Below are positions 14,127-54,132 of a stretch of 63,024 nt of DNA, piece after piece; position 1 is the first letter of the stretch; each line of letters starts with the position of its first letter. Position numbers and translations under genes: made by a program. Under the pieces are notes generated by a model. That model had not been told where the DNA came from. It searched no databases and worked only from the letters and a program-made list of their open reading frames with translations. Origin of the DNA: Stylophora pistillata (taxonomy: Eukaryota); the NCBI RefSeq assembly GCF_002571385.2, contig NW_019218199.1:159395-222418 (forward strand), read 5' to 3'.

Positions 14127-14903
14127 TTAAACACAATCCGTACGAATTGCCTTTGATCCACAATTCTTAAAAGTCACCATCTTATATTTTCCTGTGCATC
14201 CCCGCTTGCAGACCGGAATTAGGAAAAATTTGCCGCAAATGTCTTTTGGTAAGTAGTGTTTAATACAATTATTTCCTGGATTCCGAGCATATCGAGCATG
14301 TTCAAAGGAATTTTCTTTAATCTCATCCTTTACTACTGAGTTTTCAGCGAGAGTCGAAGTTTCTTCGAAGTCAGGCTTGTGATTTTCCTATCGTTCCAAC
14401 CAATCTATGTCTTCGGCGGTGTCCTTAGCAACATCTAGAGAGGTCTCTTGTTCTACCAGAAGCCAGTCTATATCGGCCGTATCATTTTCTTGAGAGATGG
14501 AAGGTTGCAAAGGGTTTGTAGGTCGTGCCTCTGTGTCCCCGTCAGAATGAAGCAATGTTAATATGGCGATGTGCATGAAAATGATGGAGCAGATACGTTT
14601 ACGGCCCTGCAAAGAGATACGAATGCATTATCTAAATTGCTTTCCTACTATTATAGAGCTTTCTTTAAAAAAAGTGTTAGTGAAATCCGCCTAAATATGT
14701 ACATTCACGAGGAGATATTGAACAAAAACTCACTAATTTACTGAAGTTTGTAAACATTAATGTAGCTTAAACATTCTTGGAAAGAGTGAATCAACGATTT
14801 TTTTCTTTTTTAGTTTTTAACTATGCAATGTGGAAACCATTATAAGGTAAATGTAAACTATACGTAGGTTAAAAAGAGTTACCTGTGAAATTCCAAAATT
14901 CAT
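14127..14903 (-). pseudogene. Peptide gene A: secreted prepropeptide with a 51-aa six-Cys cationic mature region; in-frame TAG in the pro-region (null allele, pseudogene or sequence error)
   Basis: Exon 1 14903-14883 (MNFGISQ|gtaact), exon 2 14606-14127 (ttgcag|). Hydrophobic signal ICSIIFMHIAILTLL, acidic pro-region, TAG at 14390-14388. The same frame continues to an RYAR furin-type site and NPGNNCIKHYLPKDICGKFFLIPVCKRGCTGKYKMVTFKNCGSKAIRTDCV*. Confidence 0.8.
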
Positions 14904-15004
14904 TGTGATTTTTTTCGTTTTCCTTTAGTTAGTAATTGATACTCTTCTTGTTGGTTATCAGTTGGAAGTTGAGAAATTGACTGAAGACGATTGAGGTCCA
15001 TCGC

Positions 15005-52100: not shown

Positions 52101-54132
52101 GTAGATCATGGGTGAATTTGATAATTCTTTTGTCAGGGCATTTTACATACCATACCCAGTGCCATTTAACAGATACGTATCCTTTCTACATTACATTACG
52201 TGAGAAAAAAGGGTGCTCTCAGAATGAAATAAATGATAATAATAATGATAATGATAATAATAATGATAAAGAAAAAAATAATAATGATATTAATAATAAT
52301 AATTATATGATAATAGTAGTCGTAATGATAAAATGATACGAAAGGGTAATCTACGTACACGTAATATTTCTTTTCTGTTTTGTAATCAGATTACCTCTCT
52401 ACCATATCCAGTTCAGATACCCTTCTACTTGCTATTCGGTAAGTTTGGTAAACACCGGAACAAAGCTAGAAACAAACAGTTCATTTGCTGGAATATTAGT
52501 TTATTTTTTCTTTTGACTTTTGAGGCAAAGTATCACGCGAGATATATGAAGGCTTTCGCCGAATCAAAACAAACTCATAGCAAGACCATAATCCCTAAAA
52601 GGAACTTTATTAAGCCTTGCCTTTTGTTATTATTATGTTATTATTTTCATTATCATAAGTATCAAAAACATTATTAGTTCAAATTAATTAATTCATAATT
52701 AACTTTTCATTGTGGGGTTTTGATCAAACTCACAATGTGGACTTATGGCTTGAGGGCTAGATTGCCTGTTCAGTCGGTGCATGAATTCTGCTTCTCTGAA
52801 ACATGTTTTGTACCCGTCATTTTGCAGCTTGCAAAGTGCCAACACCGTGCCGTGCGTTTATGGGTGAGTTGTTCGGCTGAGACCAGGGATTTATGCAAAC
52901 AAACATAATATTTAAAAGTAGTACTTTTGTTTTCTTCTTCTAAGGGCAGTAGGGCGGCTCGATTTCTCTAGTATTCTCACTATTAGAAGGCAGGGTGGCA
53001 GAGAGTTTAGACTTACACTTAAAATCTGAAAGAGTCAGAGTACTTTTTTCCTCATCTTTCCTCTCTCGTCTTTTTTATAGATCAACCAACTATACGTACA
53101 GGTAGGTTTGAAATTAAAAGTCTTCACCAGAACGACGTTTTCTAGAGGAAATACGTTTCTTTGAGAGGCATTAAGGGTTCAAAGAGGGAAAATTGAGACT
53201 TCGGCTAGGATGTGTTGATTTCACTTGAGTTTTTTTCAACGGAAATTCGCGTCTCTACCCGACCGCACAGAGGGACTATGTATTCAACTCAGGTATAATT
53301 AGAGGCATATCCCAGGGCCCAGACCAGGAAGCTCCCTTTCAGATTCTCTAATTTTTTTATTTTATCTCTCCAAAAATGAAATAATCATTGGTAGNNNNNN
53401 NNNNNNNNNNNGGGGGGGGCAGGCAAGAGTGTCGTACTTGAGAAATGGGTATTACGTATCCTTCTTGTCATTTAGCCGAAAAAAATCATCGACTTAAATT
53501 TGTTTGAGAAGGTTTATTAGAAGCAAATCAGCTTTTATGAGTTTTGGAAATAAGAAACAGTCTATTGCTCCCTTGTCATCCCAGAAAAATCTGCCTCTTT
53601 TTTGGACAAGGGCAAATTGTGGAGTATCATAACATTCTTCGCAAGTGAAACCTGCTGTCATCAATTCAAACAATTTCGACTGATTGCAGTCGATTATCGT
53701 CAAAGTGTCATTTTTGAATTGTAATCATATGTCCCTCGTGTAATATGTATTTACAGCAGTCACTTTTAAGTTATGAGAACTTTCTCTTTTCATTAGGTGG
53801 CGATAATGAAGGTGTTCCCAACATGGCAGCTGCCATATACTCAACATGTGCATCTGTTCTTTCAGTCTTTTTGCTCTTGTCCTCGTCGGCCGTTAACTTC
53901 ATCGCTTGGTAAGTTGTGTTGTGTTTCCAGTATTTTGTATTTTAAGAATTCTAAGAGAACTTATAATATGTCCCTTAACCCCAAGAACTCTGTGGTTTTA
54001 AGGTTATCAGTTGTTTAATCTACTGAAATTGTTGTTTCAGAAATGGAATTTGAGTACGACGCCTTTCTTATATACAGCTCAGAAGCCTCAGTGTGGCAGG
54101 GTGGCAAAACGCTTGGCTTGAAGAATTGTGTG
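46109..54132 (+). pseudogene. TIR-receptor copy 2; ectodomain exons intact, TM exon frameshifted, TIR truncated
   Basis: Exons 46109-46303 (195 nt, as in copy 1; FIWSNV..VQC..CLRRCG), 47162-47207 (LSLDHLCYTKCIGKE), 47909-47989 (ends RVKR), 50066-50110, 50339-50395, [gap], 51540-51608, 52390-52438, 53081-53101, 53797-53908 (112 nt, breaks frame), 54041-54132 (EFEYDAFLIYSS..W..KTL/GLKNCV, then repeat DNA). Confidence 0.75.
48790..49200 (+). mobile_element. 3' end fragment of a CR1/L2-type LINE
   Basis: YRGAILWN motif typical of CR1/L2 ORF2 ends; simple-repeat (gatt)n nearby. Confidence 0.5.

What the first reader, a model, noticed from the sequence alone, without database searches (positions are those of the whole stretch)
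14127..54132. Repeated head-to-head module of a secreted Cys-rich peptide gene and an FN3-TIR receptor gene: candidate linked ligand-receptor immune system
Seen: peptide A (-, ATG 14903) faces receptor copy 1 (+, ATG 19712), and peptide B (-, ATG 36876 or 38336) faces receptor copy 2 (+, ATG 46109). Both peptide genes have a TATA box, a 7-codon first coding exon, a phase-0 intron, and then signal, pro and Cys-rich regions in one exon. Known: Toll is activated by the cleaved cystine-knot Spaetzle; IL-17R (FN3 + SEFIR) and Torso (FN3-type ectodomain) bind cystine-knot ligands. Inference: these may be co-duplicated, co-regulated ligand/receptor pairs of an undescribed cnidarian cytokine-TIR pathway. 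Caveats: there are only two instances, and the two peptides show no sequence similarity to each other by eye.
Basis: partly seen in the sequence, partly recalled or inferred. Interest (0 to 1): 0.88.

Follow-up and report, generated by a model that had tools for sequence, protein, structure and literature searches.

The report
Coral TIR receptor–secreted peptide gene cassette

Summary
The window is Stylophora pistillata DNA. Most of the gene models hold. Peptide B (NCBI LOC111339673) is expressed and spliced as read. Receptor copy 1 ends in an intact, expressed TIR exon.

The proposed head-to-head module does not hold.
- Peptide A has an in-frame TAG before its Cys-rich part. Its only paralog is unlinked to any TIR gene. 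It is absent from the closest duplicate of receptor 1.
- Receptor copy 2 keeps only about 35 residues of its TIR exon.

The unit that really repeats is different. Peptide B lies 2 kb downstream of receptor copy 1, in convergent orientation.
- All ten full-length peptide-B-family genes in this genome lie convergent with a TIR exon of this receptor family. Nine are 0.6-4.7 kb away and one is 12.8 kb away.
- Tara Pacific coral metagenome scaffolds show the same pair about 0.6 kb apart.
- The TIR tree and the peptide tree are congruent.
- RNA contigs from tighter loci run from one coding sequence into the other in antisense.

The peptides share a conserved signal and acidic propeptide and a variable six-Cys domain with no known fold. 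Ligand function is untested.

The parts
19712..19906 (+). Receptor copy 1, exon 1: signal peptide and first half of the Cys-helix module. The end at a GT donor is inferred.
   Evidence: The ORF and the donor are read from the sequence. The exon is conserved in 23 places of the genome and in paralog loci.
20674..23365 (.). Transposon insertion in intron 1 of copy 1: a Harbinger-type DDE_Tnp_4 ORF, the assembly gap 21994-22544 and an inverted 0.3-kb duplication.
   Evidence: This stretch is absent from the C725 duplicate. Pfam DDE_Tnp_4 scores 9.3e-06.
24203..27000 (+). Receptor copy 1, ectodomain exons (inferred). These are 24203-24248 (second Cys-helix half), 25381-25461 (linker with a KRIKR dibasic site), and about 26459-26575 and 26898-26985 (beta-sandwich strands).
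   Evidence: tblastx conservation with copy 2 and the paralog loci, together with splice motifs and consistent phases. No RNA was laid here.
32233..32370 (+). Receptor copy 1, transmembrane exon. The 3' end is fixed by RNA; the 5' end is inferred.
   Evidence: The loose read ends at the TIR exon carry the last 30 bases of this exon in all four runs.
33497..33936 (+). Receptor copy 1, TIR exon, including the TAA stop.
   Evidence: Pfam TIR_2 3.9e-21 and TIR 1.9e-13. Stranded reads come from the + strand transcript. The acceptor is read at 33495-33496.
33937..34704 (+). Receptor copy 1, 3' UTR.
   Evidence: Depth is continuous up to about 34704, where the contig ends in adapter sequence.
35077..35202 (.). 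SINE-like repeat in the silent 1-kb spacer between the two 3' ends.
   Evidence: Depth is very high on both strands and there are many loose ends. Copies occur in other loci, five in tandem at C961.
35726..36264 (-). Peptide B, exon 2. The CDS runs from 36264 to 35896, with the stop at 35895-35893 and the 3' UTR reaching the polyA site near 35726. It encodes the signal core, the propeptide and the 7-Cys domain ending in G-RKR.
   Evidence: RNA comes from the - strand, with a joint at 36264 and a poly-T loose end at 35726. The translation matches NCBI P0151.
36856..36968 (-). Peptide B, first exon a: 5' UTR and 7 codons from ATG 36876. A TATA-like box lies near 36990.
   Evidence: The joint 36264/36856 (GT..AG on the - strand) is seen in runs X2, X3 and X24. 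A contig reaches 36968.
38316..38345 (-). Peptide B, alternative first exon b: 7 codons from ATG 38336.
   Evidence: The N-terminus of NCBI isoform X2 matches. There is low RNA coverage at 38110-38400 from the - strand transcript. No joint was listed.
14127..14903 (-). Peptide A. Exon 1 is 14903-14883. Exon 2 starts at 14606. An in-frame TAG lies at 14390-14388. The six-Cys ORF is 14387-14130, with the stop at 14129-14127.
   Evidence: Read from the sequence. The only paralog, on C210, has an uninterrupted ORF. No database homologs were found.
46109..46327 (+). Receptor copy 2, leader-exon ORF (47% identical to copy 1).
54037..54132 (+). Receptor copy 2, remnant of the TIR exon: the first roughly 35 residues, then a stop and no further similarity.

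Best explanation
SHOWN
- The repeated unit is a two-gene cassette. A single-pass, non-LRR TIR receptor gene (copy 1, 19712-33936, + strand) is followed tail-to-tail by a small two-exon gene (peptide B, - strand).
- Peptide B encodes a prepropeptide: a 7-codon first exon, a signal peptide, a conserved acidic propeptide with dibasic sites, and a variable C-terminal domain with the framework C-x19-IC-x4-6-CxC-x6-12-CxxC.
- The cassette has been duplicated as a unit about ten times in this genome. It also occurs in Tara Pacific coral metagenome scaffolds.
- Both genes are transcribed.
- In the tighter copies, RNA contigs run from one coding sequence into the other in antisense.

INFERRED
- The peptide is cut by a proprotein convertase and secreted as a disulfide-bonded peptide of about 50 residues. 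It is +10 in this window, with an amidation-type G-RKR tail.
- It works in the same pathway as its neighbour. My odds, which sum to 1: cognate extracellular ligand or modulator of the neighbour's fast-evolving ectodomain, about 0.25; host-defence effector sharing the receptor's regulatory neighbourhood, about 0.2; coupling mainly through 3' antisense overlap, about 0.1; no functional coupling, about 0.45.
For: LINKAGE
- All 10 full-length family members found with profiles A1 and A2 lie convergent with a family TIR exon. The spacings are 0.6, 0.6, 0.9, 1.05, 1.8, 2.0, 2.2, 2.2, 4.7 and 12.8 kb.
- Outside the TIR exon, diverged cassettes no longer align at the DNA level, so the linkage is old.
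- Tara scaffolds L025, L030, L031 and L034 carry the peptide gene and then a TIR exon on the opposite strand about 0.6 kb away.
- The TIR tree and the peptide tree give the same pairs: C411 with C961, C768 with C35b, the window with C725, and C1533 with Tara.

EXPRESSION
- At this locus, stranded reads, the intron joint and the polyA site are all seen.
- The spliced RNA contigs L024, L036 and L037 join a TIR coding sequence to an antisense peptide coding sequence.

SELECTION
- The ortholog-like pair C1533 and Tara has dN/dS 0.28 in the mature domain.
- Paralog pairs have dN/dS of about 1 there, yet all six core Cys are kept.
- The signal-plus-propeptide part is conserved even at synonymous sites.

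PRECURSOR LOGIC
- The propeptide is acidic (-9 to -14 in most members). The mature part is mostly cationic.
- The mature domain is modelled confidently (pLDDT 86-91).
Against: - A duplication that spans both genes gives linkage and congruent trees with no functional tie.
- Many receptors of the wider family have no peptide partner. These include C375 and the copies on C179, C611 and C41.
- One Tara cassette keeps the peptide next to a decayed TIR exon.
- Three of the ten peptide copies carry one in-frame stop in the reference: C1533 TAG, C35a TGA and C725a TAA.
- dN/dS of about 1 among paralogs is also what relaxed constraint gives.
- The charge of the mature domain ranges from -3 to +11, which is not uniformly like an antimicrobial peptide.
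- At this locus the two 3' ends are about 1 kb apart and do not overlap.
- An unstranded contig that crosses two genes does not prove a single transcript or true overlap.
- No binding, co-regulation or cell-type data were obtained.
Confidence: 0.55

Rival explanations
1. Hitch-hiking only. The peptide gene lies inside the segment that is copied whenever the receptor is duplicated. Both genes are functional but work independently.
For: Segmental duplication is visible: window 19103-38314 matches C725:74196-91999 at 81-92% identity, introns and spacers included. TIR genes are known to expand by tandem duplication in corals, with Pocilloporidae-specific clusters (PMC10236652). Congruent trees are expected from co-duplication alone. 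Partner-less receptors exist, and one peptide gene sits beside a decayed TIR exon.
Against: No solo peptide gene was found among the ten in this genome or on the Tara scaffolds. The pairing outlasts the loss of all alignable spacer DNA. It is kept in a second coral source.
Confidence: 0.35
2. Head-to-head modules (peptide A with copy 1, peptide B with copy 2) share divergent promoters and form cytokine-receptor pairs.
For: The orientations are as described. Both peptide genes have a 7-codon first exon followed by a phase-0 intron.
Against: - Peptide A carries an in-frame TAG.
- It is missing from the C725 duplicate, whose homology starts at window 19103.
- Its only paralog, on C210, has no TIR or leader exon nearby.
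- Copy 2 has lost its TIR exon.
- Peptides A and B are not homologous.
- Most peptide-B-family genes have no receptor leader exon upstream, whereas all have a TIR exon downstream.
- The ATGs are 4.8-9.2 kb apart, with transposons in between.
Confidence: 0.03
3. The convergent arrangement exists for cis-antisense control. Overlapping 3' ends let transcription of one gene dampen or stabilise the other, whatever the peptide does.
For: Spacing is only 0.5-1 kb in most cassettes. RNA contigs L024, L036 and L037 are continuous across both coding sequences in antisense.
Against: At this locus the transcripts end about 1 kb apart, and both genes are expressed in the same libraries. The contigs are unstranded. 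Spacing reaches 2-13 kb in several intact cassettes.
Confidence: 0.1

Closest known systems
Hydra Toll-related receptors (HyTRR) acting with HyLRR and inducing the antimicrobial peptide periculin
   Same: It is a cnidarian transmembrane TIR protein without LRRs. The TIR of a family homolog (P0010) matches the Hydra TRR-2 TIR structure best (4w8h, Z 20.1, rmsd 1.6 over 127 residues). The Hydra pathway ends in a secreted peptide (as summarised in PMC4178034).
   Different: The coral proteins have a sizeable ectodomain: a Cys-helix module, a dibasic site and a predicted beta-sandwich. No LRR partner is known for them. In Hydra the peptide gene is not described as a neighbour of the receptor gene.
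Coral TIR-domain gene expansions (TIR-only proteins of Poole and Weis 2014; TIR orthogroup tandem clusters in Noel et al. 2023, PMC10236652)
   Same: It is the same kind of lineage-specific, tandemly amplified TIR gene family, including Pocilloporidae-specific clusters. At least 20 copies with more than 70% TIR identity occur in this genome.
   Different: In what I could read, those surveys do not mention a linked secreted-peptide gene. The ectodomain exons are easily missed, so many models look TIR-only (P0003-P0005).
Damicornin, the antimicrobial peptide of Pocillopora damicornis
   Same: [quoted passage not shown] Peptide B of this window is +10 and ends in G-RKR.
   Different: No named damicornin appeared among the 22 database relatives. 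I had no tool-supplied damicornin sequence, so the Cys arrays could not be compared. Several family members are neutral or acidic.
Toll-Spaetzle, IL-17R-IL-17 and Torso-Trunk (cystine-knot ligands)
   Same: The idea is the same: a convertase-processed secreted Cys-rich protein acting on a single-pass receptor, with TIR or SEFIR signalling in the first two.
   Different: Peptide B is about 50 residues and is predicted as two helices plus a hairpin. It has no Pfam or fold match to cystine-knot cytokines. To my knowledge, those ligand genes are not linked to their receptor genes.
Brassica S-locus (SRK receptor kinase with the small Cys-rich ligand SCR/SP11); Botryllus fuhc region
   Same: The genomic logic is the same: a receptor gene and a small, highly variable, secreted Cys-rich peptide gene held in tight linkage. 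This comparison rests on my own knowledge.
   Different: The kingdom and the signalling domain differ. Variation here is seen among paralogs. Allelic hypervariability and any role in self-recognition are untested. In one other sample, 4 of 5 differences were nonsynonymous.

Membership tests
TIR-domain receptors (Pfam PF13676 / PF01582) | A TIR domain above the gathering score at the cytoplasmic end | tested here: met
   In copy 1, exon 33497-33936 scores TIR_2 76.2 bits and TIR 51.1 bits. Copy 2 does not meet the feature: only about 35 residues remain.
Toll / Toll-like receptors | An LRR ectodomain | tested here: not met
   No LRR family was hit in the window exons or in the full-length homologs P0010, P0017 and P0019.
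FN3-domain receptors (Pfam PF00041) | An fn3 profile match or an FN3 fold in the ectodomain | tested here: inconclusive
   There is no fn3 hit in the window exons or in P0010, P0017 and P0019. The relative P0012 has two extra canonical fn3 domains (2.1e-30). The P0010 model shows a 6-7-strand sandwich at residues 133-219, with pLDDT 65-75. The fold search was dominated by the TIR domain.
Cystine-knot cytokines (Spaetzle/NGF, IL-17, Trunk/PTTH) | A beta-rich cystine-knot domain of about 100 residues, recognisable by profile or by fold | tested here: not met
   Neither peptide has a Pfam hit. The peptide B model is two helices plus a hairpin. Foldseek gave no match at E<=0.001 and VIA-align gave a best Z of 2.3. 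The profile found no PDB relative.
Damicornin-type antimicrobial peptide precursors | Signal peptide, acidic proregion, dibasic site, cationic six-Cys C-terminal peptide, Gly amidation signal | tested here: inconclusive
   The architecture is met for this window's peptide B. Sequence relatedness could not be tested. No named damicornin is among the hits.
Peptide B family (defined here, alignments A1 and A2) | A short first exon, a phase-0 intron, a conserved signal and acidic propeptide, a six-Cys framework, and a convergent TIR neighbour | tested here: met
   Peptide A fails this test.
Linked receptor-ligand specificity loci (S-locus type) | Tight linkage, a hypervariable ligand and specific binding of cognate pairs | not testable with these tools
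   Linkage and variability among paralogs are met. Binding was not testable: the cognate ectodomain is spliced from several exons, and joined models were not to be submitted.

The most novel reading that the evidence does not exclude
Each cassette may be a matched specificity pair. The variable six-Cys peptide would be the cognate secreted ligand of the neighbouring receptor's fast-evolving ectodomain. Tight linkage would keep the matching alleles together, as at the plant S-locus. Pocilloporid corals could then use a panel of such pairs for self/non-self (allorecognition) or for telling symbionts and microbes apart, signalling through TIR.
Probability: 0.1. Interest if true: 0.9.

Novelty: new variant of a known kind. 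Interest (0 to 1): 0.6.

Why it matters
Corals have greatly expanded their TIR-domain genes, but none of these orphan receptors has a known ligand or output. This cassette is conserved, co-duplicating and co-expressed, and it pairs such a receptor with a secreted, processed, disulfide-rich peptide. That gives a concrete candidate partner for each receptor copy. It can be tested with a synthetic peptide and a recombinant ectodomain. Even if the peptides prove to be independent host-defence peptides, they form an undescribed pocilloporid family with a conserved propeptide, a variable mature domain and no known fold.

Tried and rejected
- Pfam on both peptides, the leader exons and the ectodomain exons gave nothing significant.
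- Peptide A's Cys-rich ORF found no homolog in the 5.8-billion-protein collection and nothing usable in the ESM Atlas.
- Peptide B gave nothing in the Atlas, in PDB sequences, with Foldseek or with VIA-align wide (best Z 2.3).
- Homology between peptides A and B was rejected.
- A pairing of peptide A with the two rhodopsin-type GPCR genes downstream of it was rejected, because the C210 paralog has no GPCR within 7 kb.
- An intron that would skip peptide A's TAG was considered and rejected. The only candidate sites would give an intron of about 45 nt with a poor donor (reading).
- Exact-sequence look-ups of P0151, P0010 and P0002 found no contigs.
- Complex prediction was not run. The cognate ectodomains are spliced from five or more exons, joined models were not to be submitted, and no database protein with a known peptide partner had a complete ectodomain.
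Exons were searched one by one by reference.
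Full report
SOURCE AND LAYOUT
The window is contig C415:159395-222418 of a 397.6-Mb assembly in 5513 contigs. The organism is Stylophora pistillata, because peptide B is identical to NCBI LOC111339673 isoform X2 (P0151). N runs lie at 21994-22544, 50729-51146 and 53395-53411, and there are two single Ns.

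THE GAPS
The first gap lies in a 2.7-kb stretch (20674-23365) that is absent from the closest duplicate locus on C725. That stretch holds a Harbinger-type DDE_Tnp_4 ORF and an inverted 0.3-kb duplication. It is an intronic transposon insertion in receptor copy 1 and touches no exon. The other two gaps lie inside receptor copy 2. Continuity and frame across them are unknown, so an exon could be hidden there. None of my main conclusions depends on them.

PEPTIDE A
- The TATA box, ATG 14903, the seven codons, the GT donor and the acceptor before 14606 are all present.
- The reading frame meets TAG at 14390-14388, after the pro region.
- The six-Cys ORF (14387-14130) follows in the same frame.
- The only paralog in the genome (C210, E 2e-6) has a short first exon and one uninterrupted ORF from signal to Cys-rich end. 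It lacks Cys 2 and Cys 5 together, which suggests that those two pair with each other.
- So peptide A is a real small family, but the copy assembled here is interrupted. I could not tell whether this is a nonsense allele, a young pseudogene or an assembly error.
- No relatives were found elsewhere.
- It is not homologous to peptide B.
- C210 carries no TIR exon and no receptor leader exon.
- Homology between the window and the C725 duplicate of receptor 1 begins at window 19103, so that duplicate lacks peptide A.

RECEPTORS
Copy 1:
- The leader exon is at 19712.
- Ectodomain exons were placed by conservation with copy 2 and two paralog loci, with consistent splice phases.
- The transmembrane exon ends at 32370.
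- The TIR exon is 33497-33936. Its junction is seen in all four RNA runs and it matches Pfam TIR_2 at 3.9e-21.
- Stranded reads place the transcript on the + strand, with a 3' end near 34704.

Copy 2:
- It has a homologous leader exon (47% identity) and colinear exon matches.
- Its TIR exon breaks off after about 35 residues at 54132, and no remainder lies in the window.

Family:
- Full-length relatives (P0010, P0017, P0019) show a signal peptide, a Cys-helix module, a dibasic site, a predicted beta-sandwich, a transmembrane helix and a TIR domain.
- Pfam fn3 is found only in extra domains of P0012.
- The model of P0010 has a 6-7-strand sandwich at moderate confidence. Its TIR domain matches Hydra TRR-2 best (Z 20.1).
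- 'FN3' therefore remains unproven.
- The genome holds at least 20 TIR exons more than 70% identical to this one.

PEPTIDE B
- RNA from four runs, two of them stranded raw-read runs, shows transcription from the - strand.
- The intron 36265-36855 is seen as a joint in three runs.
- A poly-T loose end marks the polyA site at 35726.
- There is weak coverage of the alternative first exon at 38336, which NCBI's isoform uses.
- Both genes are expressed in the same libraries.
- Here their 3' ends are about 1 kb apart, separated by a SINE-like repeat.

THE REPEATED UNIT
- Searching the genome with peptide B, then with family profiles, found ten full-length members.
- Every one lies convergent with a TIR exon of this receptor family.
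- The spacing is 0.6-2.2 kb for eight of them, 4.7 kb for one and 12.8 kb for one.
- By contrast, a receptor leader exon upstream of the peptide gene exists only where cassettes lie in tandem (this window, C725, C35), at 8-23 kb.
- Among diverged cassettes, DNA similarity ends exactly at the TIR stop codon and reappears only faintly in the signal and propeptide part of the peptide exon.
- The TIR tree and the peptide tree group the loci in the same way. This includes the pair C768 and C35b, which shows that the peptide gene 12.8 kb away is the true partner of that TIR exon.

OTHER SOURCES
- A profile search of the protein collection gave 22 proteins, all unnamed or 'uncharacterized'.
- Tara Pacific coral metagenome scaffolds carry the peptide gene followed about 0.6 kb later by a TIR exon on the other strand. 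In one type the TIR exon is decayed. I did not identify the host. Tara Pacific worked on Pocillopora, Porites and Millepora (PMC10236652, and my own knowledge).
- Three RNA-seq contigs from other samples are spliced on one or both sides. They run from a TIR coding sequence into an antisense peptide coding sequence. This is consistent with abutting or overlapping 3' ends, but it is not proof.

THE PEPTIDE FAMILY
- The acceptor site sits just before the hydrophobic signal core in every copy.
- The signal and acidic propeptide are conserved. The C-terminal 45-60 residues vary, apart from six Cys and one Ile.
- The propeptide charge is mostly -9 to -14. The mature charge ranges from -3 to +11, and is +10 here with a G-RKR tail.
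- Among paralog pairs, the mature domain has dN/dS 0.96-1.55 and dS near the neutral level of the flanking DNA. The signal-plus-propeptide part is conserved even at synonymous sites.
- The ortholog-like pair C1533 and Tara has dN/dS 0.28 in the mature domain.
- At such divergence, keeping all six Cys by chance is unlikely (my estimate), so these are working disulfide-rich proteins.
- In one other sample, 4 of the 5 coding differences in peptide B change the amino acid. The numbers are small.
- The mature domain is modelled at pLDDT 86-91 as two short helices and a hairpin. It matches nothing in the PDB.

INTERPRETATION
- The cassette itself is shown.
- That the two products work together is an inference from persistent one-to-one linkage, shared extracellular location, fast divergence of both the ectodomain and the mature peptide, and co-expression.
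- Co-duplication alone can produce the linkage. Partner-less receptors, decayed partners and three nonsense-bearing peptide copies show that the tie is not absolute.
- I therefore give functional coupling about even odds and ligand function about one in four.
- Literature searches found the TIR expansions, Hydra TRR and periculin and damicornin. They found no mention of the linked peptide gene or of the two NCBI loci.
- The scan's own notes hold nothing on this cassette elsewhere.

LIMITS
- Joined spliced models were not submitted to any tool.
- Reads were laid only on 33400-38400, so peptide A's expression and its TAG were not checked with reads.

Noticed in passing
window 4528-5334 (-) and 10266-11102 (-): Two tandem rhodopsin-family GPCR ORFs (Pfam 7tm_1 at 2e-15 and 7e-16; 68% identical to each other) lie downstream of peptide A on the same strand. 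The C210 paralog of peptide A has no GPCR within 7 kb, so no pairing is suggested.
   Followed up: partly
window 25381-25461 and 47893-48003; relatives P0010, P0012: The receptor ectodomains carry a conserved dibasic KR-x-KR motif (KRIKR, ERVKR, KRTKR) between the Cys-helix module and the beta-sandwich. This suggests convertase cleavage of the receptor itself.
   Followed up: no
window 35077-35202; also five tandem copies in L016 (C961) and copies in L040: A short repeat shows very high RNA depth on both strands and many chimeric read ends. It is probably a SINE-like element and sits in the spacer between the two 3' ends.
   Followed up: no
window 17245-17960: A near-perfect inverted repeat of about 350 bp per arm gives mirror-image ORFs on both strands, in the spacer between peptide A and receptor copy 1.
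   Followed up: no
window 57620-58508: Exon-like matches to the N-terminal ectodomain of relative P0002 lie after copy 2's broken TIR exon, followed by a retrotransposon-like ORF (58860-59903, -). This looks like the start of a further receptor body.
   Followed up: no
window 54440-54660: A minisatellite of about eight 21-bp units lies just after the truncated TIR exon of copy 2.
   Followed up: no
G000:C35:1023439-1023537 (-) and 1023881-1024033 (+): A weak peptide-B-type signal/propeptide fragment (E 0.003) lies 350 bp head-to-head with a weak receptor-leader-like fragment (E 0.07). It may be a rearranged remnant.
   Followed up: no
L011 (C725:87375-87807): The TIR exon of the close C725 duplicate aligns in two overlapping frames. 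A frameshift is possible there, while its peptide partner is intact.
   Followed up: no
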